DNA of 64,000 nt, taken from the IMG/VR virus record IMGVR_UViG_3300018080_000098, positions 124,001-188,000 of that record. One strand, given 5' to 3'. The translations under genes and the position numbers were made by a program. Shown in pieces: positions 33,233 to 43,725 of the stretch. The first letter of the stretch is position 1, and each line of letters opens with the position of its first letter. The notes below the pieces were generated by a model that did no database searches, had not been told where the DNA came from, and saw nothing but the letters and a program-made list of their open reading frames with translations.

Positions 33233-34678
33233 ATGCATGCGGTAAATCATTCTCAAGCGGAAAACTGGAGTACTTTTAATGACTTAGCCAAGAGGACTCT
33301 TGAATATGATCCTTTGGTGAAAGAGGATCTAACTCGGACGTTCCTCCAAATCGAACAGTTGATATTCAAGGGTGTAGACTATCTCCTGATGGCTACTACG
33401 TTCGTGGAAGACAATTTGTGCTATCTTCTCGCAGAGATAGCGTCTGGAGTCATTAAGAGCCGGAAGGTCTACAAGGGGAAACGGGTCCGCCGACGAGTTG
33501 CCATGAACGACGAGATAGAAATGGGCGCTGAAAACAAGCGGATCTTCGGTATCGGCTTCGATCTCTTCAAACTCTCACGCATGGATCGCCAACACGCAGT
33601 TCCCTTCTCCAAACGTATCATTCGCACACTCCGCATTTCTACCAGCCACTACGAAAACATCCTTACCGCGTTCGCTAAGGTGGGCGCCCGCTACATTGAA
33701 GTATCCGACGATCTCGCCCACACTACCCTGCGCTTGATCAACCAACGCCAGAAAAACGAGAAGCGTGCTACGAAAAAGGGAGCAGCTTCCGAAACAGCGC
33801 TTACCAAGCAGGCCGAAGAGTTCATCGATCAAATGGACCTCCTCGAGCTCGATATGGGGTGCGTTGAGCCCAATCTTCTCTACGGCACCATCCGCGCAGT
33901 AGTTCGCATCCTGAAGCGCGTGCGCGTTCTGCAAGAGCGCATTCTGAAAGCGTACTCCCGTTTGGTGCTGAAGCCAGTGAAAGGCCGCGCACAAACAGAG
34001 ATGGAGGCCCTTGACCTGTTTCAATCAGGTAGCCTGGGCCTCTCACGCGCCATCTCCTTGTACGATCTCCGCTGCGGCACCAGCTTCCCTACCTTCGCAA
34101 ATTGGTGGATACGTCAGAAAATACTCGGGAGCGCGAAGCACAGCGGTTCCCTCATCAAGTTACCTGGTTCCGTAATCGAACGCTACCAGGAGATCACGAA
34201 AGCTGAACGTTTCTTTGAATCCAACCCCGACCTCCGCGATTCTTATACTATAGAAGATGTAGCCGCACGTTGCAAAACTACAGCCAAGTCCGTCGAGCTT
34301 GTACTCCGAAAAGTGCGCAGCACCCGTGTGGTCTCTCTAGAGTCGATGGTGAGCAGCAACGAGGAGGGGTACGAAAGTGACCTGGCAGCCGACCGAGCTC
34401 TGCTTGATGAGTCAATGGAAGAAGAGGAGGCGCTTCAGGCCACCTCCGAGTTCGTTTCTCAAGTACTCAGTCATGTAGAGGAAAGCCAACGCAACCTCGT
34501 GTGCCTGCGTTACGGAATCATTGAGCGCGTGGTATCTAAACTTGACCCTCGTCAAGAGGTACGTGAGCTCTTCCGCCAAGCTGCATGCAAAGCTTTGCTG
34601 CAGCAGAAGATGTCGATGCGTGCTAACAGCCATCTAGCGATGCTCCGGGTGGAGGAGCTTCCCGCCGACCAAAAATAG
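33233..34678 (+). CDS. Phage RNA polymerase sigma factor (RpoD/sigma70 family)
   Basis: Region 2 DLFQSGSLGLSRAISLYDLRCGTSFPTFANWWIRQKI, LIKLP, region 3 TIEDVAARC...VVSLE; region 4 degenerate. Confidence 0.88.
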   Translation: MHAVNHSQAENWSTFNDLAKRTLEYDPLVKEDLTRTFLQIEQLIFKGVDYLLMATTFVEDNLCYLLAEIASGVIKSRKVYKGKRVRRRVAMNDEIEMGAENKRIFGIGFDLFKLSRMDRQHAVPFSKRIIRTLRISTSHYENILTAFAKVGARYIEVSDDLAHTTLRLINQRQKNEKRATKKGAASETALTKQAEEFIDQMDLLELDMGCVEPNLLYGTIRAVVRILKRVRVLQERILKAYSRLVLKPVKGRAQTEMEALDLFQSGSLGLSRAISLYDLRCGTSFPTFANWWIRQKILGSAKHSGSLIKLPGSVIERYQEITKAERFFESNPDLRDSYTIEDVAARCKTTAKSVELVLRKVRSTRVVSLESMVSSNEEGYESDLAADRALLDESMEEEEALQATSEFVSQVLSHVEESQRNLVCLRYGIIERVVSKLDPRQEVRELFRQAACKALLQQKMSMRANSHLAMLRVEELPADQK

Positions 34679-34785: not shown

Positions 34786-36078
34786 GTGAGCATGGCAAAG
34801 AAAACACCGTATGGTAGAGGACGCAGATCGATTTCTAACGCCCCCGGTGGCGGAAATTATGCCGAGAAGTGGCATCAGAAGCTGGATTATTTGGAGAAGC
34901 CGAAGAACAAGAAGCCGAAGGAGATTCGAATTGTCGGTGGGCTGTTCACCATTTTCCAGCACTTCGTCCGCTTCAAGCGCAAGGACGGCAGCAAGGGTGG
35001 TTTTTACGAGGTTTGCCCGGATTTCGATTGGGAGACTGGAGAATTTCGTAAGGGGCCCGATGCGGTGTGCCCGCTGTGCGCGGATTTCCAAGCGGATGAC
35101 CTTCCGCAGGATTTGCGCCTGCTAGGGTCCTTCCGTTACTACATGGACGTTTTCGATGTGTCTGCCGCGAAGGAAGGCCGCAAGGACGGTCTTTTCGGGG
35201 TCGTTTTCACCAACAAGTATGGAAAGAACGACCTGGCAACGATCGGGGACATCCTGGGCGCCGAGGTTGATGATCTCAAGAACGGCTGCACGGTACACTG
35301 GCACTACAACGATAAAGCACAGGACCCGAAGGACCGCGTGCGCTTCTATCAGGGCAACAAGCTGCCGGTCGGGTTCGACGAGGACAAAGGAGTTTTCGTT
35401 CTGAAGGGTGGAGGGATGCGCTTCGAGGGCAACCCGACGCCGTTCGACGAGATTGTGGAAGTGAAGAGCGCCGACGATATCCGAGCCGACCTGAAGCGGT
35501 TGGGTCTGTACAAGAAGCTGGACGAGGTGCTCGAGGTGGTGGCGAGTCGGGAGGAGAACACGGGTGGCCGTGGGAACGCTTCTCGGGATGCTTCTTCGGG
35601 TGGCTGGGGTGATAATGAGCAGTCCGAGGAACCCCGTCGGCAGAGGCAACAACGTTCCTCCGGTAATAAGGGTGGGAGTAAGCAGGAATCGTTCTCTTCC
35701 GACAGTGGTTGGGGTGACGACTCGTCTGGTTCTGAGGAGCTCGAGACCGCTCCCGCTGACGAAGGGTGGGGCGACGATAGCCAAGCTTCTTCCTCCTCTT
35801 CAAATGAAGGGTGGGGAGAGGAGAGCAGCTCCTCTTCCTCCGACGAAGGTTGGGGCGAAGATTCTTCTAGTGGTGGAAACGGCGCTTCCGATGAAGGGTG
35901 GGGAGAGGAGAGCAAAGCGTCTTCCTCTGATGACAGCTGGGGCGAAGCTCCTTCTGGTGGCGGCGATAGCGCTCCCACACACGACGACAGCTTCTTCGGG
36001 AGTGACGAGGGGTGGGGAGATGACTCTTCTAGCGGCTCCTCCAGTAAATCTTCGGGCGACGACCCTGATGGGTGGTAG
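34786..36078 (+). CDS. ssDNA-binding protein (gp32-like) with long acidic Ser/Gly GW-repeat tail
   Basis: FYEVC...CPLC core, aromatic-rich OB-like body, long acidic tail, position just upstream of recA. Confidence 0.65.
   Translation: MSMAKKTPYGRGRRSISNAPGGGNYAEKWHQKLDYLEKPKNKKPKEIRIVGGLFTIFQHFVRFKRKDGSKGGFYEVCPDFDWETGEFRKGPDAVCPLCADFQADDLPQDLRLLGSFRYYMDVFDVSAAKEGRKDGLFGVVFTNKYGKNDLATIGDILGAEVDDLKNGCTVHWHYNDKAQDPKDRVRFYQGNKLPVGFDEDKGVFVLKGGGMRFEGNPTPFDEIVEVKSADDIRADLKRLGLYKKLDEVLEVVASREENTGGRGNASRDASSGGWGDNEQSEEPRRQRQQRSSGNKGGSKQESFSSDSGWGDDSSGSEELETAPADEGWGDDSQASSSSSNEGWGEESSSSSSDEGWGEDSSSGGNGASDEGWGEESKASSSDDSWGEAPSGGGDSAPTHDDSFFGSDEGWGDDSSSGSSSKSSGDDPDGW
35602..36078 (+). repeat. Imperfect (D/E)-x-G-W-G peptide repeats
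   Basis: 7 x GWG, 1 x SWG and a terminal GW, separated by Ser/Asp/Glu spacers; DNA unit like GA(C/T)GA(A/G)GG(G/T)TGGGG. Confidence 0.85.
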
Positions 36079-36452: not shown

Positions 36453-37730
36453 ATGGGCGCGAAGAAAAAAGCCAAGCCTGTCATCGTGCATCCAGCGGAA
36501 GCTGCGTCCGCAGCATTCGACGAGATGACCGAACTCGACTGTATCAACCTACGCCAGGGACAGCGAGTAAAAGATGTTCTGTCTACCGGCAGCCTGTCGC
36601 TAGACCTGATTCTTGGAGGTGGCTTTAAACCAGGTCTTATGGGCACCATCTTCGGTCCCGAAGGTAGCGGCAAATCCACGCTTCTGCTTTCCATCCTTGC
36701 CAGCTCGCAGCTGCTGAATATCCCTGCATGCCTCTACGACCCTGAAGCAGGTTCGGACCCCGTGTACATGCGCACGATGGGCATCGATCTCAACTACCAA
36801 ATCAAATACAAAGAAGGAAAAAAGACCCACACCCGCTCAGGCTTCTTCTACACACAGCCCGATACAGGGGAAGCAGTTTACCGCCACATCCTTCGAGTGC
36901 TCAGCAAACTGCCTATCGTGGATGATGGACCACCCCGTATGCTGTTCCTCATAGACAGCTTTGCCGGTATGGGCAGCGAAGAAGTCGATGAGGTTGGCGA
37001 TGGAGGACGCATCGCAGATGAAGCCCGTATGCACAGCTACTTCCTTAAAAGGGTTGTTCCCCGCCTGCGCCGACGAGGAGCTCTCCTCATCGGTACAAAC
37101 CAGATGCGCACTAATATCGGTGGCTACGGAGCCCCCCAACAAGAAGCTGGCGGCAAAGCGCTTCGATTCTGGCCAGGCTACAAAATCCGCTCCTCTGTGA
37201 AGCGCGTAGAACCCGATAAGATTGGTGTTCAGACAGTGCCAGTCATCTGGCGTACCACGAAGAACAAAGCGTTCCCTCCCTTCCGCAGTACAGACATGCG
37301 TCTGATGCTTGGTAGGGGACTCGATAAATCGTACGACGCCTTCTACTTCTTGAAGCACCTTGGGCTTCTCGAAATCCGTGCTGGCAAGCAGAAGATCCAT
37401 ATCGATGGGTACGATAACAAGGTACTCAGTTGGGCAGATTTCCGTCGCACCGTAGAGCAACCCAGTTTCCGCGATATGTGCTTCGCGATGCTCCGGGAGA
37501 ACTCTACGTACAAAACGTACTTCGAGAACAGCAACGAAGCAACCTACTTCTACGACGCCGACTATGACGACCCTGACGACCCTTCCGAAGATGATCTCAA
37601 GCAGCAGGTAGAAGACGAAGCAGCTGAGTACGCAGAGGGTCGACAAAAACGTCTCAAAGCTGGTAAAAAGCCTGCCAGCAAAAGCAAGCGAGAAGACCAC
37701 GAAAGTGTAAGCTTCGACGAATCGTTCTGA
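36453..37730 (+). CDS. recA: RecA/UvsX recombinase
   Basis: STGSLSLDLILGGG, IFGPEGSGKSTL, IDSFA, NQMR, GGKALRFW, KNK. Confidence 0.95.
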   Translation: MGAKKKAKPVIVHPAEAASAAFDEMTELDCINLRQGQRVKDVLSTGSLSLDLILGGGFKPGLMGTIFGPEGSGKSTLLLSILASSQLLNIPACLYDPEAGSDPVYMRTMGIDLNYQIKYKEGKKTHTRSGFFYTQPDTGEAVYRHILRVLSKLPIVDDGPPRMLFLIDSFAGMGSEEVDEVGDGGRIADEARMHSYFLKRVVPRLRRRGALLIGTNQMRTNIGGYGAPQQEAGGKALRFWPGYKIRSSVKRVEPDKIGVQTVPVIWRTTKNKAFPPFRSTDMRLMLGRGLDKSYDAFYFLKHLGLLEIRAGKQKIHIDGYDNKVLSWADFRRTVEQPSFRDMCFAMLRENSTYKTYFENSNEATYFYDADYDDPDDPSEDDLKQQVEDEAAEYAEGRQKRLKAGKKPASKSKREDHESVSFDESF

Positions 37731-38770
37731 TGTCTGAAGGACTCGCATCTATTACCGACGTATTCAGCTCGCTTTTCGTCTTGCTGAAACGTCGCGACGA
37801 TGGCACCTACGGGGCGCTGGCTATCACCGCTGCGCCCAGCCTTCACGGACCCGCTCTCCCATTCGATGCAGTAGAGCCCGGTGTGTACCGGTTCCATTGG
37901 ACTGCCGATGAAGCGAAGCAGGTTTCCATGGCGCTGCGTAAGCTGGGCTACATCACCTACTTTTTCAACTTTGAGCGCTTACAGGAACAATTCACGCCAC
38001 TACGTGAACTGACTCCTCTTGCGGGCGCACAGCCCACGTACCCACATCTAGCGGAGATTGCCGAATACCTTCCCGAATGCCAGATCTACGTAGAAGTGTT
38101 CGGAGGACGCACCCCACTTTTGATGGCGCGCACTCCAGCTCCCGTCGAAGTTTTCAACGATTACGCTCGAGCAGCCATCTCCTTTTTCCACGTTCTGCGA
38201 GACCCTGAGCTGTTCACTGATTTCTACCTCCTTGGGCGTGTTCTGCCACCGTCGCTGCAGCTCCCTGCGTTCCATCTGTTTTCCGCGTGGGAACTGCTCA
38301 GCGACAGCGATGCGGCCCTTGCATCTTACGCGTGGTACTGTTATGTTCGCCAGGCGTTCCCAGAGGTATCTGTACCAGAAGAACGGCAGGAAATACCAGA
38401 CGGCACACCAGCAAAGGTGATGGCAGCTCTCCACAGCGTAGACTACATGCTTCCGCGGATACACAACCGTTTGTACCGTGTGCAGATAGAGCACAATATC
38501 ATAGATGCAGTGCTCAAAATTTACGATTCGGACAAAACCCTCTTTTGGGTAGACCCTCCCCACGAAGGGGCAGGAGCACTCGACCTCGCAGGTACCTACG
38601 ATCTGCTGTCCCATCTGGATATGCAGGAAGGCTCTGTAGCCCTGTACGACAATCAGAATCCAAACATCCGACAGATGATGCGGATTAAAGATGGACCCTG
38701 GAAAAACTGGGAACCGGCGCAGTTCGGTCCCGCAACAGTGTACCTGAAACAGTGTACAACCGATGCCTGA
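37730..38770 (+). CDS. D12-class (Dam-like) DNA adenine methyltransferase homolog with altered motifs and N-terminal extension
   Basis: IYVEVFGG, VEVFND, VQIEH...IYDSDKTLFWVDPPH (canonical YxEPFxG and DPPY). Confidence 0.75.
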   Translation: MSEGLASITDVFSSLFVLLKRRDDGTYGALAITAAPSLHGPALPFDAVEPGVYRFHWTADEAKQVSMALRKLGYITYFFNFERLQEQFTPLRELTPLAGAQPTYPHLAEIAEYLPECQIYVEVFGGRTPLLMARTPAPVEVFNDYARAAISFFHVLRDPELFTDFYLLGRVLPPSLQLPAFHLFSAWELLSDSDAALASYAWYCYVRQAFPEVSVPEERQEIPDGTPAKVMAALHSVDYMLPRIHNRLYRVQIEHNIIDAVLKIYDSDKTLFWVDPPHEGAGALDLAGTYDLLSHLDMQEGSVALYDNQNPNIRQMMRIKDGPWKNWEPAQFGPATVYLKQCTTDA

Positions 38771-39038
38771 AAAGGAGAAAATCATGGCAGCCAAAAAGAA
38801 AAGTAAGAAGGTTCTCACCGAGCAGCAAATGAGGAAGGCCACTGGCGAGTTCTTCAAAACGTACGGCCCTAAAGTCATCACGGCTTCGCGTGTGAAAGAG
38901 TACTACGGTTCCCTCGGCCTCCGTGTCGACAGCACGTTGGCAGAGTCGCTCGCGCGGAAGTACACCGAGATGATGCTCAACGCAGCCCTTCGTTGCGTTG
39001 GCAACAAGCGTGGTACCGTGCGCCCGGTAGACCTGTAG
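38763..39038 (+). CDS. Bacterial-type histone-fold protein with Lys-rich N-terminal extension
   Basis: VITASRVKEY...LRVDS...LARKYTEMMLNAALRCVGNKRGTVRPVDL aligns by eye with the Bd0055-type histone fold, including the R-x-T-V-x-x-x-D L2/alpha3 signature. Confidence 0.85.
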   Translation: MPEKEKIMAAKKKSKKVLTEQQMRKATGEFFKTYGPKVITASRVKEYYGSLGLRVDSTLAESLARKYTEMMLNAALRCVGNKRGTVRPVDL

Positions 39039-39054
39039 GCCACAGCGAAGTAGT

Positions 39055-40131
39055 ATGCCAAAGTTTCTGCACACCGCAGACCTGCACCTCAACGCCCTCA
39101 GGCGCTTCAGCCAGTTCTACCTGGAGCGCGCTCAGGAGTGCCTTCGGTCGATTCACCAAATCGCCAAAGAGCACCACGTAGAGTTCATTGTGGTCGCAGG
39201 AGATATCTACGACCGACGTGATATCACCCACGCGGAAAGGTTACTCCTGTCGGAGTGGCTGGCTGATTGTGACATTCCCATTATCATGATTAGCGGTAAC
39301 CACGACAAGCGCTCCGCAGAAATTGGAGATACCTGCATCAGCTACCTCTCCACTTTCTCCCACCGCTTGGGTGACCACCACGTCTACGATGGACCTCCCT
39401 CCGTCTACGAGCGCTTCGGCTGCTACTTCGCCCTCTTCCCTTTCCAGGGATGGATGGATCAGGAGCTCTTCCTCATCCTACAAACCCTCATCGCAGACCA
39501 CTGCCCGAACCAGTCCCTCCCGGTCATCGTGGTCATGCACGAGGCTGTGTACGGTTGTAAAACGGATGTCGGAATGACTATTACCAAGTCAAACCAAATC
39601 CGCCTCGACACCAGCTTTCCTCGAGTAACCTATTGGGCACTCGGGGATATGCACCTCCCACAACGTATCTCCGACTTCGCTCGTTACTCCGGGTCGCCAC
39701 ATCAAACCCGTTTCGATGAAGTCGAAGATAAGGGGGTGCTCATCGTTGATACCGACAACCCTGCATATCCGGAATTCGTTCCTGTTCCATCCATCCCCCT
39801 TCGTATCGTTACCGAGGAACCAGACCATTGGCCCTCTCCACAGGAAGCGCTTATCCAGTTTCGGCCCGATGGACCGTTCCCCGAACGTGCCCTGCCACTC
39901 AATGTGGAGTTTCACCCTAGCGTCGTCGCCCTCCACCACACCCAGGAACGAGACCGCAACGCCATCCGCGTAGGCATCTTCGAAGGACTCGACGCCGCAT
40001 TGCAGCGCGCCCGACTCCACGAAGACCTGTTCCCACTCGCGTGGCGCCTCGCCGTGAAATTAGCGAAAACAGCCGGAGTAGAAGTACCTCTACCCGATAG
40101 ATACCAGACCGAGGATACATCCGATGAGTGA
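39055..40131 (+). CDS. sbcD: SbcD/Mre11 nuclease
   Basis: LHTADLH, VAGDIYD, ISGNHD, MH, ALGDMH, YSGSP. Confidence 0.92.
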   Translation: MPKFLHTADLHLNALRRFSQFYLERAQECLRSIHQIAKEHHVEFIVVAGDIYDRRDITHAERLLLSEWLADCDIPIIMISGNHDKRSAEIGDTCISYLSTFSHRLGDHHVYDGPPSVYERFGCYFALFPFQGWMDQELFLILQTLIADHCPNQSLPVIVVMHEAVYGCKTDVGMTITKSNQIRLDTSFPRVTYWALGDMHLPQRISDFARYSGSPHQTRFDEVEDKGVLIVDTDNPAYPEFVPVPSIPLRIVTEEPDHWPSPQEALIQFRPDGPFPERALPLNVEFHPSVVALHHTQERDRNAIRVGIFEGLDAALQRARLHEDLFPLAWRLAVKLAKTAGVEVPLPDRYQTEDTSDE

Positions 40132-41278
40132 ACAGAACCTGCACCTGGCAGCAAAGTGGCGCCCCAAATCCTTCGACGAAGTCGTAGGCCAACAGGAAAT
40201 TGTGGACAGCCTCCGAGGGATGATCCTCAGCAAGAAAATCGACCCCGTTCTCATCTTCCACGGTCCCTACAGTACCGGCAAGACTACCCTCGCAAGACTC
40301 GTTGCCTACTATATCAACTGCCAGAAACCCAACGGCATCGAGCCCTGCAAAGAGTGCCCCAGCTGTAAACAGATGCAGCCCGTACTCCTCGGGCGCTCCC
40401 AACACCCCGATGTGACTGAGCTCAACATCGCACTGCACGGAGGCATCGACGAGTTCCGCCGCCTCTCCTCCATCGCACCACAAGCCCCCCGTTACAACTT
40501 CCGCGTCTTCATCCTGGACGAAGCTCACCAGACCACCGCTGCCGCTTTCCAAGCCGCTCAGAAGATGTTCGAGGACCCACCGCGCCGCACTCGCTACATT
40601 CTGTGTACCACCGAGTTCCAGAAGCTCCCCGCTACTATTCGTAGCCGATCAGCTATCTTCTCAACGCAACCACTCCCAACCGAGCTGGTAGCACGCCGCC
40701 TCTTTCACGTCGCCGCACAAGAAGGCTTCAAGCCCCCCAAGGAGCAGCTGAAGCAGCTCTGTCTCCAGATCGCCACCGTTAGCGATGGCCACCTGCGCGA
40801 CGCCCTCAATCTGCTGAGCACCGTTATCAACAACGCCAAGGCCACAAAAAGCAAAACATCCGACTGGCAGGAGCTACTCACTGAGGTAGTGAAACAATCT
40901 ACCGAGCTGCAAACTAGCGAAGTCATCCGTGCGTACATGAAAGCCGTAGTCACCAGAGATATACCAGCGGCCTTCTCAGCTCTGCGTCACGTGACAAACG
41001 ATGTGTACTTTACGCAGCAGGTTATCATCGCCTTCCAACAGATTTTCTACTTCTGGATTGACGAAGACCTCTGCGACCGCGGTAAGCTCTGGCTCATCAA
41101 AGGTGTCCCAAGGGTCCCCACACCATCCAACACTGTGGAGACCATCCCAGCCATCCTGGATGAGTATGTTGGCGCCCTGGAACGGCTCCGAACTTACGCC
41201 ACAGACCCTCTCGCTGTGCTCGAAGCAGCCACGCTCCGCGTGATGAAAATGATGCCACCCAAACCCCAGCGTAGCTAG
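40124..41278 (+). CDS. dnaX: Clamp loader, DnaX (gamma/tau)-like AAA+
   Basis: KWRPKSFDEVVGQ, GPYSTGKTTLAR, C...PCKECPSC, FILDEAH, TIRSR, GHLRDALNLL. Confidence 0.92.
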   Translation: MSEQNLHLAAKWRPKSFDEVVGQQEIVDSLRGMILSKKIDPVLIFHGPYSTGKTTLARLVAYYINCQKPNGIEPCKECPSCKQMQPVLLGRSQHPDVTELNIALHGGIDEFRRLSSIAPQAPRYNFRVFILDEAHQTTAAAFQAAQKMFEDPPRRTRYILCTTEFQKLPATIRSRSAIFSTQPLPTELVARRLFHVAAQEGFKPPKEQLKQLCLQIATVSDGHLRDALNLLSTVINNAKATKSKTSDWQELLTEVVKQSTELQTSEVIRAYMKAVVTRDIPAAFSALRHVTNDVYFTQQVIIAFQQIFYFWIDEDLCDRGKLWLIKGVPRVPTPSNTVETIPAILDEYVGALERLRTYATDPLAVLEAATLRVMKMMPPKPQRS

Positions 41279-41283
41279 CTACA

Positions 41284-43725
41284 ATGCCCCTCATCGAATA
41301 CGAATCCCTCGATTTCGAGAACGCCTACATCTACCGGAAGTGTAGCTTCCCCCTGGAAAATCAGGGGCTCGTGCTCGTCCGCGGCCTCAACGTCGACGAT
41401 GGCGGCTACCTGGGTGCTGGCAAGTCTTCTATCTTTGAGGTGTTTGCTTCCCTTCAGGTGGGAAGAGGCGGTAAAAGAGAGCGCCGCCAAGGCAACTTCC
41501 GCACCAACCTGGTGAACTCGTTCGTCGGGGAAGATATGGTAGCTTCCCTCAAGCTCCGCGTCGACGGCCATCCGTACGAAATACGACAGTACCAGCAGCA
41601 CCACCGTTTTCACAACAAAATACTGGTCATCGATCGCGTGACCGGACAGGACATCCGACCCCGCTCCAGTGGCCACTCTCCCTTCAAATGGGTGCGTGAT
41701 GAGTTTCTGCGTATCGATGAGACTACGTTCTTCAATCTCATCTATCTGGTGCAGGAGCTTAATAATGTGATGATCCACGGGAAGGAGTACGAGCGCCGCA
41801 ATCGCTTGACAGCGATGTTCGATTTGGATATCTACGATGAGCTCCGCGCACTAGCTAAACGGGCCCTCTCAATGCATACTACTTCCATGTCGGACTTCGA
41901 GGAAGTCCGCAGCGAGCTTAGAGAGGTAAAACAGAAAATCTTCGCCCTACCGGACTTGGTAGACCTCGAAGCGGAGTTCGAAACAGCGGAAGCCCTCCTG
42001 AACCATATGCAGGAGCAGCACGAAGAGGATACTCAGGAATACACGCAGGTAGCCGATCTCTGCTCAAAACTTCGGCAACGCTCCACAGGACGTCGGCAAA
42101 TCATGTCGAAGTTCAAAGGCAGCTCCCTGACAAACACGTTCGACCACCCCAAGGATATTACCATTCGCAACGTGAAAAGATGGAAGAGTCGCTATGATAA
42201 CTTCAGCGCTGACTACATGGCTGCCCAGACAGACCTCGAGAAGCTCGAGAAACGCGATGCCCTTCGTGCCCAACTATTGAAGCTGAGCGACCGTGATGCA
42301 GAAGAGATTCAGGACGACTTGACCGACACCAAGACGAAGCTCACCTATATGAATCAGGTCGAGCTCCCTCAATCGGAAGAACGTCAGAGCCTGCTCATCA
42401 AATTGCAGCGGTTGACGGAGCCCGTTACACCGCTGGAAGAGCTTGAGGATGAGTTGGAAGCTGAGCAAAAGGAAGAGACAGAACTCAAGCGTGACGTGAA
42501 GGACCTGGATGCCGAAGTGCGTGAAGCTGTATGCCCACACTGCAAGCGCCCCTTTGATATGACAGCTGAGGAGCTAGCGGAGAAGCGAGGACGCTTAGCT
42601 ACTGCGCGGGACAGACTGCAGGAGCTTACACGAACAATCCATAAGCTGAAGAAGGAAATCAAGGCCTCCCGCGACATCAAAAACATCCGTGGGCGACTCA
42701 AGGCGTTCGAGACGCAGCGCTCCCCCGAGGAAGTGACAGAAGATATTCGGGAGCTTTCAGGTAAAGAGCGCAGGCTCGCCTCCGAACTCGAGACGTCGCG
42801 CCAGCGTACCAGGATAGAAGCAGAACTGGAGACGATGCCCACCGCGAGCAAAGATGAGCTCATCGAAAAGTGCAGCAAGCTTCGTCGCAGTGTCGAACGC
42901 GCCAGGGAACGCCACGAGGTGGGGAAGTTCATTGTGGAGAAGTTGGAGGAGTTGAAAAACCTCCCCAAGGGAAGCTTGGACGAAGCACAAGGACTACTAC
43001 GAGAACTTCAAGGACGCATGACGAGGATGTCGTCGAAAATTTCACAGGCGAGCGCAGATGCAACACACCTGAAAGAGCGTGTCAACGAGCTGCGTCAGCT
43101 ACTTCGGCGGGAGACCACCCTGAAGCGCACGTTGGAAAAGCAGAAAGCAATCGTCTCCGAGATTACGTGCTTGGAAGCCCTGAACAAAGCGTTCGGCACC
43201 AACGGTATGAAACAAGACCGCTTCGCCACCATCCTATCCGATGCGGCTGAGCGTACAGTCCCTGCATACTCAGATATCCTGTGGCCAAACCGTAACGTTT
43301 CCCTAGACTTGTCCGGTGAAGATGGCTCCTCGCTCCAGTTTGCGCTGGGGCGCCAGTCGGGAAATGTGGCCACCAGAAGCAGTATGCTCTCTGGCGGCGA
43401 ACGCCATAAAGCAGGGCTCGCTTTCCTTTTCGGGCTGCGCGACCTCAAGGAGCTCTACACGGGCAGCCGGTCCAACGTTCTTATCGTGGACGAGCCCTTC
43501 GGAAACCTCGATCCTCTCGGAACCGAAGGACTCATTTCCATCTTCGCTCTGCTCAAACAGAAGTTCGGTTCCGTCTTCGTCATCAGTCACAGACCAGAAG
43601 TTCTGTCCCATCCAGTGTGGGACCAGACGTGGTGGGCCATTCGCGAAAACAACAACGCGACACTTTATTTGGAAGACCCACCAGCGCGGTACCATCAAAT
43701 TGCCAACAACCTTGTAAAACAATAA
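41284..43725 (+). CDS. sbcC: SbcC/Rad50 ATPase
   Basis: GAGKSS, Q-loop YLVQ, coiled coil with CPHC Zn hook, LSGGE, IVDEP, VISH. Confidence 0.92.
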   Translation: MPLIEYESLDFENAYIYRKCSFPLENQGLVLVRGLNVDDGGYLGAGKSSIFEVFASLQVGRGGKRERRQGNFRTNLVNSFVGEDMVASLKLRVDGHPYEIRQYQQHHRFHNKILVIDRVTGQDIRPRSSGHSPFKWVRDEFLRIDETTFFNLIYLVQELNNVMIHGKEYERRNRLTAMFDLDIYDELRALAKRALSMHTTSMSDFEEVRSELREVKQKIFALPDLVDLEAEFETAEALLNHMQEQHEEDTQEYTQVADLCSKLRQRSTGRRQIMSKFKGSSLTNTFDHPKDITIRNVKRWKSRYDNFSADYMAAQTDLEKLEKRDALRAQLLKLSDRDAEEIQDDLTDTKTKLTYMNQVELPQSEERQSLLIKLQRLTEPVTPLEELEDELEAEQKEETELKRDVKDLDAEVREAVCPHCKRPFDMTAEELAEKRGRLATARDRLQELTRTIHKLKKEIKASRDIKNIRGRLKAFETQRSPEEVTEDIRELSGKERRLASELETSRQRTRIEAELETMPTASKDELIEKCSKLRRSVERARERHEVGKFIVEKLEELKNLPKGSLDEAQGLLRELQGRMTRMSSKISQASADATHLKERVNELRQLLRRETTLKRTLEKQKAIVSEITCLEALNKAFGTNGMKQDRFATILSDAAERTVPAYSDILWPNRNVSLDLSGEDGSSLQFALGRQSGNVATRSSMLSGGERHKAGLAFLFGLRDLKELYTGSRSNVLIVDEPFGNLDPLGTEGLISIFALLKQKFGSVFVISHRPEVLSHPVWDQTWWAIRENNNATLYLEDPPARYHQIANNLVKQ

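What the first reader, a model, noticed from the sequence alone, without database searches (positions are those of the whole stretch)
38763..39038. Phage-encoded histone with a Lys-rich N-terminal tail
Seen: residues ~37-91 fit the bacterial Bd0055-type histone fold (V-I-T-A-S-R-V-K alpha1; long alpha2; KRGTVRPVDL with the R-T-D signature). They follow ~35 extra residues containing AAKKKSKK. Established: Bd0055-type histones bind DNA as essential nucleoid proteins and are essentially tailless; viral histones are best known from eukaryotic giant viruses. Inference: it coats or condenses phage DNA, shields it from host nucleases or organises recombination. It lies in the recA-MTase-sbcD-dnaX-sbcC operon, and the tail could be modifiable.
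Basis: partly seen in the sequence, partly recalled or inferred. Interest (0 to 1): 0.85.

Follow-up and report, generated by a model that had tools for sequence, protein, structure and literature searches.

The report
Phage face-to-face histone with basic tail
A 350-kb uncultivated phage encodes a small, real histone-fold protein most like the DNA-wrapping tetrameric histones of Leptospira and archaea. It carries a lysine-rich tail and an extra helix, but this class of phage histone was already described from metagenomes in 2025, so it is a well-supported new member and not a new kind of thing.

Summary
Window 38784..39038 (+) encodes an 84-aa basic protein (pI 10.2) under purifying selection. 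Residues 31-84 are an alpha3-truncated histone fold. All orthologues start at the second ATG, behind a conserved AAGGAG.

The closest solved structures are the face-to-face (FtF) histones HLp (profile E 5e-14; model RMSD 0.7 Å) and HTkC. Bd0055/HBb is more distant. The FtF tetramer residues (HLp R49/N53/R55 = R70/N74/R76), the RD clamp and the exact C-terminal end are conserved, and HBb lacks two of them. The best reading is therefore a toroidal tetramer that wraps about 60 bp, not a Bd0055-type dimer.

The N-terminal extension is a short Lys-rich tail plus a conserved helix (alpha0, residues 13-30). Proteins with alpha0 form one clade. In every context found they sit between RecA/methyltransferase-like and SbcD/clamp-loader/SbcC genes of large phages.

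[quoted passage not shown] Function in infection is untested. Novelty is modest: the alpha0 helix, the fixed place in the replication/recombination module, and apparent core-gene status.

The parts
38784..39038 (+). Histone gene, 84 aa plus TAG stop.
   Evidence: ORF list. The public gene call P0001 is 84 aa. Orthologues start at the equivalent ATG. dN/dS is 0.12-0.15. It is the only histone-fold ORF in the window.
38772..38777 (+). Shine-Dalgarno AAGGAG, 6 nt upstream of ATG 38784
   Evidence: Sequence. The same AAGGAG lies 6-8 nt upstream in L001, L004, L007, L009, L015, L016 and L022.
38784..38816 (+). Residues 1-11: short Lys-rich tail (net charge +5), predicted disordered
   Evidence: pLDDT for residues 1-10 is 47 to 61. 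Charge. Tail length within the clade ranges from almost nothing to roughly 35-50 residues ahead of alpha0 and stays basic.
38820..38873 (+). Residues 13-30: extra N-terminal helix alpha0, with a conserved hydrophobic stripe (M16, F23, F24, Y27) and basic positions (14, 17, 18, 30)
   Evidence: AF2 helix 13-30 with pLDDT about 90 using the deep alignment. Column conservation over the 31-member clade.
38874..39035 (+). Residues 31-84: alpha3-truncated histone fold (alpha1 34-43, alpha2 52-73, one-turn alpha3 81-83)
   Evidence: Gap-free alignment to HLp 9qt0. AF2 model. Foldseek RMSD 0.7-0.8 Å to 9qt0/9qt1. ESM Atlas structural neighbours are histone-fold clusters.
38991..39011 (+). R70, N74 and R76, equivalent to the HLp tetramerisation residues R49, N53 and R55. 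R76 also forms the RD clamp with D83 (39030-39032).
   Evidence: Mapping from the HLp alignment and the HLp paper. R70 is invariant and N74 and R76 are at least 90% conserved in the clade. The HTkC R45A mutant (equivalent to R70) is a dimer.
36453..37730 (+). RecA/UvsX-like recombinase, a conserved upstream neighbour
   Evidence: Pfam RecA 2.5e-28 and PHROG 97 UvsX-like 2e-50. Synteny.
37730..38770 (+). 346-aa methyltransferase-like gene (DPPH motif), directly upstream in 6 of the 7 lineages seen
   Evidence: Weak PHROG 56 and 1996 hits at 1e-7 and 1.5e-6, no Pfam hit. A syntenic 322-360 aa gene is present in all contexts; in L015 an extra 85-aa ORF separates it from the histone.
39055..40131 (+). 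SbcD/gp47-like nuclease subunit, immediately downstream
   Evidence: Pfam Metallophos 9e-15 and PHROG 100 at 3.6e-28.
40124..41278 (+). Clamp-loader subunit
   Evidence: Pfam DNA_pol3_delta2 1.9e-23 and PHROG 5846 at 5.8e-56.
41284..43725 (+). SbcC/gp46-like ATPase
   Evidence: PHROG 77 at 7.4e-55.

Best explanation
The gene encodes a phage histone of the face-to-face (FtF) alpha3 class.

Shown: it has a truncated-alpha3 histone fold nearly superimposable on HLp. It keeps the residues that hold FtF dimers together as a closed tetramer, namely R70, N74, R76 and a C-terminus ending right after D83-L84. It also keeps most backbone-contacting DNA residues: S35, R36, K38, R47, R76 and T78.

Inferred: like HLp and HTkC, two dimers form a toroidal tetramer that binds DNA without sequence preference and wraps about 60 bp around itself. 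The N-terminal extension leaves the fold at the alpha1 N-terminus, which is a DNA-contact site in HLp. The four alpha0 helices and Lys-rich tails per tetramer therefore probably add DNA contacts or bridge neighbouring particles.

Inferred from fixed gene order and the strong conserved ribosome-binding site: it is made abundantly together with the replication/recombination proteins (UvsX-like, SbcCD-like, clamp loader). It acts as an architectural protein on intracellular, replicating phage DNA, compacting or organising the very long recombination-dependent replication intermediates and limiting nuclease access.
For: Fold and subtype:
- PDB profile hits are HLp 5.2e-14, HTkC 1.3e-9 and HBb 2e-5.
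- Foldseek with the pLDDT 89.5 model ranks HLp first (RMSD 0.7-0.8 Å, TM by target 0.9, 38% identity), followed by HBb and HTkC.

Tetramer residues:
- HLp R49/N53/R55 are stated to be conserved in tetrameric FtF histones. They map to R70/N74/R76, which are invariant or at least 90% conserved in 31 clade members and at least 90% conserved in 123 relatives.
- HBb has S and D at the first two positions.
- HTkC R45 (equivalent to R70) binds the opposing C-terminal carboxylate, and R45A gives dimers.
- 29 of 31 clade proteins end at the same position.

DNA contacts: HLp A13/S14/K15/K17/T57 and HTkC S8/K9/K11/R22/R51/T53 align with A34/S35/R36/K38/R47/R76/T78.

The protein has pI 10.2 and net charge +11.

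Context:
- The order RecA, MTase-like, histone, SbcD, clamp loader, SbcC holds in seven lineages, down to 39% identity in full-length pairwise alignments and 43% over the fold for P0048.
- No + strand promoter-like or terminator-like site flanks the gene.
- AAGGAG is conserved.
- GC3 is 0.73, against 0.58-0.69 in the neighbours.
Against: - No multimer model could be run and no experiment exists for any phage FtF histone, so tetramerisation and DNA wrapping are extrapolated from 38% identity to HLp.
- Some HLp contact or interface residues differ: S52 to G73, T61 to V82, K21 to G42, T27 to V48.
- alpha0 could sterically alter or block the torus or the DNA path.
- Position in an operon shows co-expression at most, not the target DNA.
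- The GC3 excess in an 84-codon gene is weak evidence.
Confidence: 0.55

Rival explanations
1. It is a Bd0055/HBb-like dimeric histone. It binds as a dimer and bends or coats DNA without forming a tetramer.
For: It belongs to the same alpha3 superfamily. HBb is a significant profile hit at 2e-5 and superimposes at about 1.0 Å. The added alpha0 could prevent torus closure.
Against: HLp and HTkC score far better. The tetramer residues R70 and N74, absent in HBb, are conserved in the clade. Schwab et al. define bacterial dimers by the loss of these residues.
Confidence: 0.15
2. It is a host-takeover factor. The histone is made early to condense the host nucleoid and shut off host transcription and replication, and does not organise phage DNA.
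For: HLp expressed in E. coli reorganises the nucleoid (abstract). Binding is expected to be sequence-independent. The gene sits among early/middle-type DNA-metabolism genes, downstream of a phage sigma factor.
Against: Host-takeover genes are usually variable and peripheral. This gene keeps a fixed slot inside the recombination/replication module across lineages sharing only 39% identity in full-length alignments. A non-specific binder would coat the more abundant replicating phage DNA as well.
Confidence: 0.12
3. It is a recombination or replication accessory factor. Like the eukaryotic MHF (CENP-S/X) histone-fold tetramer with FANCM, it would bind dsDNA or branched DNA and recruit or stimulate the neighbouring UvsX-like or SbcCD-like enzymes, perhaps through alpha0.
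For: It is invariably placed between the recombinase and SbcD. alpha0 has a conserved hydrophobic stripe that suits a protein-protein contact. MHF chains appear among the weak Foldseek hits.
Against: There is no specific similarity to MHF beyond the generic fold. Basic tails of variable length fit bulk DNA binding better than a specific partner. The strong conserved SD suggests abundance, not a stoichiometric cofactor.
Confidence: 0.12
4. It is a virion-packaged condensing protein that neutralises DNA charge inside the very large capsid and is injected with the genome.
For: Highly basic small proteins do this in other viruses. The authors of the moraphage paper speculate similarly for an H1-like protein.
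Against: The gene lies in the replication/recombination block, not among structural or late genes. No structural gene was detected nearby in the window.
Confidence: 0.05

Closest known systems
[quoted passage not shown] 2025, hLife (PMC13681535)
   Same: They are phage-encoded, FtF-like alpha3 histone folds carrying a Lys-rich N-terminal tail of 5-40 aa, with AF2-predicted tetramers. They were mined from IMG/VR 4, the database that holds this contig.
   Different: I could not verify that this exact protein is in their set, because the supplement is not held. The main text does not mention a conserved alpha0 helix, the fixed RecA / MTase-like / histone / SbcD / clamp-loader / SbcC synteny, or a huge-phage core-gene status. 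None of these proteins has been tested experimentally.
HLp, Leptospira perolatii FtF histone (PDB 9QT0-2; PMC12701072)
   Same: It is the best sequence and structure match: 38% identity, RMSD 0.7-0.8 Å. It shares R49/N53/R55, the RD clamp, the truncated alpha3 and a C-terminus ending after the D-hydrophobic pair. HLp is a tetramer that wraps about 60 bp non-specifically.
   Different: HLp is a cellular, 63-aa protein with no tail or alpha0. Several interface and contact residues differ (S52, T61, K21, T27). HLp sits next to smc, not recombination genes.
HTkC, Thermococcus kodakarensis FtF histone (PDB 9F2C; bioRxiv 10.64898/2025.12.06.692711)
   Same: It is the second-best PDB profile hit at 1.3e-9, with RMSD 0.9 Å. 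The critical R45 corresponds to R70, and the DNA-contact R22 corresponds to the near-invariant R47.
   Different: It is archaeal, shares 22% identity, has E in place of N74 and has no N-terminal extension.
HBb / Bd0055, Bdellovibrio 'bacterial dimer' histone (PDB 8CMP, 8FVX)
   Same: It has the same alpha3-truncated fold and the RxTxxxxD motif.
   Different: It shares 19% identity and lacks the tetramer residues (S and D at the R70 and N74 positions). It is a dimer that bends DNA.
'Phage histones' of Schwab et al. 2024 (e.g. A0A2E7QIQ9; PMC11390915)
   Same: They are phage-encoded alpha3 histone folds.
   Different: They carry a C-terminal tetramerisation helix, lack RxTxxxD and are predicted to bridge DNA. 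The protein here has an N-terminal extension, ends at alpha3 and keeps the motif.
Eukaryotic H3 (alphaN helix plus basic tail) and tailed Asgard histones
   Same: The layout is analogous: basic disordered tail, then an extra N-terminal helix, then the histone fold.
   Different: This is a resemblance only. There is no sequence relationship in the extension, the oligomer geometry is different, and there is no evidence of modification.

Membership tests
Face-to-face (FtF) alpha3 histones | Histone fold with alpha3 truncated to one turn and a shortened alpha2 | tested here: met
   AF2 helices are 34-43, 52-73 and 81-83, and the chain ends at residue 84. Alignment to HLp is gap-free. RMSD to 9qt0/9qt1 is 0.7-0.8 Å.
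Face-to-face (FtF) alpha3 histones | Conserved dimer-dimer interface residues (HLp R49, N53, R55; HTkC R45) | tested here: met
   R70, N74 and R76 are present. R70 is invariant, and N74 and R76 are at least 90% conserved in the clade.
Face-to-face (FtF) alpha3 histones | RxTxxxxD motif with RD clamp | tested here: met
   R76-G-T78-V-R-P-V-D83. T78 and D83 are invariant in 123 relatives.
Face-to-face (FtF) alpha3 histones | Forms a closed toroidal homotetramer | not testable with these tools
   Only monomer prediction was available. This needs AF-multimer or SEC-MALS.
Face-to-face (FtF) alpha3 histones | Sequence-independent DNA binding and wrapping (about 60 bp) | not testable with these tools
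   Only conservation of the contact residues S35, R36, K38, R47, R76 and T78 could be checked.
VFFHFP (viral FtF histone-fold proteins, Liu et al. 2025) | Encoded by a Caudoviricetes genome | tested here: met
   The contig is an IMG/VR UViG of 349,793 bp. The window carries phage replication genes.
VFFHFP (viral FtF histone-fold proteins, Liu et al. 2025) | Lys-rich N-terminal tail of 5-40 aa ahead of an FtF-like fold | tested here: met
   The extension is 28-30 aa with 8 K/R. Part of it is a helix, not a tail.
Bacterial dimer histones (Bd0055/HBb type) | Lack of the FtF interface residues (R48/N52 of the FtF HMM); dimer only | tested here: not met
   Both residues are present and conserved. 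HBb has S and D there. The definition is from Schwab et al..
'Phage histones' sensu Schwab et al. 2024 | C-terminal tetramerisation helix; no RxTxxxD motif | tested here: not met
   The protein ends at alpha3 and keeps the motif.
DUF1931 pseudodimeric histones (Pfam PF09123) | Two fused histone folds; DNA-binding residues lost | tested here: not met
   The protein has a single fold. There is no Pfam hit for it, and only 3 of 31 relatives hit weakly at E 0.037 or worse. The 'DUF1931' label on 9qt0 is the depositor's name for HLp.

The most novel reading that the evidence does not exclude
The alpha0-bearing proteins may be a distinct, lineage-defining core chromatin protein of an uncultivated clade of large phages (contigs up to 260-350 kb). 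On this reading the extra helix and variable basic tail adapt an FtF torus to work with the recombination-dependent replication machinery, for example by loading on or protecting replication intermediates from the phage's own SbcCD-like nuclease. That would be a phage 'chromatin' that is obligatory for replication, not an accessory gene borrowed from a host.
Probability: 0.2. Interest if true: 0.65.

Novelty: new member of a known kind. Interest (0 to 1): 0.4.

Why it matters
Histones in bacteria and their viruses are a young field. HBb was characterised in 2023-24, and HLp and HTkC in 2025. No phage FtF histone has been tested.

This gene offers a clean candidate. It is small and soluble-looking, it has clear point-mutant predictions (R70A for tetramer loss) and natural truncation series (tail and alpha0), and its conserved genomic slot points to a role in replication or recombination of very large phage genomes. 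It also shows that Lys-rich tails are common on alpha3 histones outside eukaryotes and Asgard archaea. As a discovery it is incremental, because the class has already been catalogued.

Tried and rejected
- Pfam gave no hit for the protein. PHROGs gave only a weak hit to an unannotated family.
- The first AF2 model, built from 8 sequences (pLDDT 70.8), gave only noise-level Foldseek results in PDB and BFVD, with EF-hands mixed with histones. It was superseded by the 123-sequence model.
- blastn of 8 kb around the gene and tblastn of the protein against 50,697 GenBank phage records found nothing. The nearest cultured-phage RecA is 30% identical or less, so there is no cultured relative.
- The genome-contig scan could only use one strict peptide pattern. 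It returned three distant Thorarchaeota histone genes.
- The supplement of Liu et al. is not held, so membership of this exact protein in their list is unverified. The TiBS 2025 review is not held.
- The hydrophobic moment of alpha0 in this protein is not above shuffles (p about 0.29). I therefore claim a conserved hydrophobic stripe across the clade, not a strongly amphipathic helix.
- I considered stop-codon read-through past the TAG at 39036 and rejected it. All homologues end at the same residue, and that C-terminus is part of the FtF interface.
- The antisense ORF 38685..39092 was rejected as spurious, given purifying selection on the + frame.
- The 'moraphage' H1-like protein (PF07432) is a different, non-histone-fold protein.
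Full report
**1. What is there**

The window has an ORF at 38763..39038 on the + strand. Two in-frame ATGs are available. The second, at 38784, is preceded by AAGGAG 6 nt upstream. Three things point to it as the real start. The public gene call for this contig is the 84-aa product (P0001). All relatives begin at the equivalent methionine ('MA.KK...'). The same AAGGAG lies 6-8 nt upstream of the start in seven other loci. The first ATG overlaps the stop of the upstream gene and is not conserved.

The gene is therefore 38784..39038. It encodes 84 aa of 9.4 kDa, with pI 10.2 and net charge +11. Against orthologues at 73% and 59% identity, dN/dS is 0.12 and 0.15. The frame is under purifying selection and the long antisense ORF is spurious. 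It is the only histone-fold ORF in the 64-kb window.

**2. Is it a histone fold?**

Pfam is silent, but other evidence is clear.
- The single sequence hits PDB 9qt0 at E 1e-3 over residues 31-83 without gaps.
- A profile of eight close homologues gives E 5.9e-13.
- A profile of the 31-member clade gives 9qt0 at 5.2e-14, 9f2c at 1.3e-9, and 8cmp/8fvx at about 2e-5, followed by NF-YB and H4 at the noise edge.

9qt0 is HLp of Leptospira perolatii, a face-to-face (FtF) histone that forms tetramers and wraps about 60 bp. 9f2c is the archaeal FtF histone HTkC. 8cmp and 8fvx are Bd0055/HBb.

A first AF2 model from 8 sequences was mediocre (pLDDT 70.8) and its Foldseek hits were uninformative. With 123 homologues the model reaches pLDDT 89.5 and pTM 0.71, with helices at 13-30, 34-43, 52-73 and a single turn at 81-83. 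Foldseek then ranks HLp first (prob 1.00, RMSD 0.7-0.8 Å over 53 residues, TM by target 0.89-0.90, 38% identity). HBb follows at about 1.0 Å and HTkC at 0.9 Å, then eukaryotic histones and NF-Y. ESM Atlas structural neighbours are also histone-fold clusters.

**3. Which kind of histone?**

Schwab et al. [quoted passage not shown] Bacterial dimers are recognised by loss of the two FtF interface residues. Their 'phage histones' have a C-terminal tetramerisation helix and lack RxTxxxD.

The HLp paper names R49, S52 and N53 of one monomer, contacting R55, T61 and F63 of the other, as the dimer-dimer contacts. R49, N53 and R55 are conserved in tetrameric bacterial FtF histones, and R55-D62 forms the RD clamp. 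The gap-free alignment has an offset of +21. These residues map to R70, G73, N74, R76, V82, D83 and L84.
- In the 31-sequence clade, R70, T78 and D83 are invariant, and K38, R47, N74 and R76 are at least 90% conserved.
- In 123 broader relatives, T78 and D83 are invariant, and S35, A67, R70, N74 and R76 are at least 90% conserved.
- HBb has S and D at the R70 and N74 positions (alignment).
- In HTkC the equivalent arginine (R45) salt-bridges to the C-terminal carboxylate of the opposing dimer, and R45A turns tetramers into dimers. Consistent with this, 29 of 31 clade members end at exactly the same residue after the D-hydrophobic pair.

The protein therefore meets every sequence-level criterion of the FtF class. 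It fails the criteria of the Bd0055 type and of Schwab's 'phage histones'. Tetramer formation itself could not be tested, because only monomer prediction was available.

**4. DNA-contact residues**

The HLp-DNA crystals implicate A13, S14, K15, K17, K21, T27, G29, T56 and T57. The HTkC-DNA crystals implicate K7, S8, K9, K11, R22, V23, R51, K52 and T53. Their counterparts here are as follows.
- Conserved: A34, S35, R36, K38, R47, V48, R76 and T78.
- Not conserved: G42 (for K21), V48 (for T27), S50 (for G29) and G77 (for T56/K52).

The core of the 'paired ends of helices' and loop contacts is kept. With a net charge of +11, non-specific DNA binding is a reasonable inference.

**5. The N-terminal extension**

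The extension is not simply a tail.
- Residues 2-11 are Lys-rich (net charge +5) and low-confidence.
- Residues 13-30 are predicted as a helix (alpha0) at pLDDT about 90 with the deep alignment.

Across the clade, alpha0 keeps hydrophobic residues at positions 16 (81%), 23 (87%), 24 (71%) and 27 (52%). It keeps basic residues at 14, 17 and 18 (61-68%) and at 30 (94%), an acidic residue at 26 (77%), and Gly at 28. The hydrophobic moment of this one sequence is not above shuffles, so I rely on the conservation pattern only.

The segment in front of alpha0 is very variable in length, from a few residues to roughly 35-50, and it stays basic, with up to 25 K/R in the whole N-terminal region.

A maximum-likelihood tree was built only from the 56 fold columns, leaving alpha0 out. 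It places all 30 alpha0-bearing proteins, plus one more, in a single clade (SH-aLRT 88) nested among tail-less or simply tailed FtF-like proteins. HLp lies elsewhere and HBb was used as the outgroup. The alignment is short and most of the backbone is unresolved, so this is suggestive and not firm.

**6. Genomic context**

The contig is IMGVR_UViG_3300018080_000098, 349,793 bp. The window is a DNA-metabolism region. It carries UvrD-like, DnaB-like and SF2 helicases, ribonucleotide reductase, a sigma factor, a UvsX/RecA-like recombinase, a weak Dam-like methyltransferase, SbcD, a clamp loader, SbcC and a DNA ligase. No + strand promoter-like or terminator-like site flanks the histone gene, and the intergenic gaps are 13 and 16 nt.

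The order RecA, ~350-aa MTase-like gene, histone, SbcD, clamp loader, SbcC recurs in several other contigs.

| Protein | Identity to P0001 | Contig |
|---|---|---|
| P0007 | 59% | 260 kb |
| P0004 | 73% | up to 38.5 kb |
| P0009 | 45% | 3.6 kb |
| P0013 | 39% | 163 kb |
| P0048 | 43% over the fold | 80 kb |
| P0022 | 39% | 15 kb |

Such a fixed slot over this divergence marks a vertically inherited module gene, not a recent host-derived moron.

A tail-only relative (P0008, 65 aa) lies on a different phage-like 137-kb contig, so FtF-like histones occur in more than one phage lineage. No homologue exists in 50,697 GenBank phage records, and the lineage has no close cultured relative.

**7. Mechanism proposed**

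Shown: an FtF-type fold, interface and clamp residues, most DNA-contact residues, strong basic charge, a conserved strong SD, and operon membership.

Inferred:
- The protein forms a toroidal homotetramer that wraps about 60 bp without sequence preference, as HLp and HTkC do.
- alpha0 and the tail emerge at the alpha1 N-terminus, a DNA-contact site. Four such arms per tetramer would add DNA contacts or link neighbouring particles.
- Co-expression with UvsX-like, SbcCD-like and clamp-loader genes places its action on replicating phage DNA, either compacting and organising it or limiting nuclease access.

Rivals are a Bd0055-like dimer, host-nucleoid condensation, an MHF-like recombination cofactor, and a virion-packaged condensing protein. 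Each is listed with its refuting experiment.

**8. Comparison with the literature and novelty**

Liu et al. 2025 mined IMG/VR 4 with the prokaryotic histone profiles (hLife, PMC13681535; bioRxiv Dec 2024). I could not confirm that this very protein is on their list.

What I did not find in the main text of that paper, or of Schwab et al. 2024 and the HLp paper:
- the conserved alpha0 helix;
- the monophyly of alpha0-bearing proteins;
- their invariant position in the recombination/replication module of large phages;
- the residue-level match to the HLp and HTkC tetramer interface.

None of the phage FtF histones has been studied experimentally. I therefore rate this a new member of a known kind, of moderate interest.

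Noticed in passing
window 34786..36078 (+): A 430-aa protein has no Pfam or PHROG hit. Its C-terminal ~170 residues are acidic and Ser-rich, with at least seven repeats of a (D/E)EGWG(D/E)(D/E)S-like motif. It lies between the sigma factor and RecA, where an SSB might be expected. Syntenic unannotated genes of 401-439 aa occur in L001 and L004.
   Followed up: no
proteins P0015, P0016, P0019, P0029, P0032, P0055, P0118 and P0020, P0046, P0064, P0065, P0077, P0079: Some metagenomic alpha3 histone folds ('SKPKEIVVVGSKVKE...') follow what look like signal peptides or transmembrane segments. Others are fused to RRM-like 'KLFVGGLS' domains, and several are tandem doublets. These are odd contexts for a DNA-binding fold.
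   Followed up: no
proteins P0063, P0083, P0108, P0111, P0156: Many FtF-like hits without alpha0 carry long AKK-repeat tails, up to about 60 aa with 25 K/R. Lys-rich tails are therefore common in this superfamily, contrary to the 'tailless' picture.
   Followed up: partly
L022:7001-7198 (137-kb contig): A 65-aa FtF-like histone without alpha0 (P0008) lies in a second phage-like lineage. It is next to an intein-containing helicase, deoxynucleoside and dNMP kinases, and a ParB_N protein.
   Followed up: partly
window 37730..38770 (+): The gene directly upstream of the histone in 6 of the 7 lineages seen (in L015 an extra 85-aa ORF lies between them) has only weak methyltransferase similarity (PHROG 56 and 1996). 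It carries DPPH in place of the DPPY motif, so its activity is uncertain.
   Followed up: partly
window 38772..38777 and gene 38784..39035: The histone gene has the clearest Shine-Dalgarno of the operon and a higher GC3 than its neighbours (0.73 against 0.58-0.69). This is consistent with high expression.
   Followed up: partly
window 33233..34678 (+): A phage-encoded sigma-70-family factor (Sigma70_r2, PHROG 351) heads the co-directional gene string that contains the histone. It is conserved in the syntenic loci.
   Followed up: no
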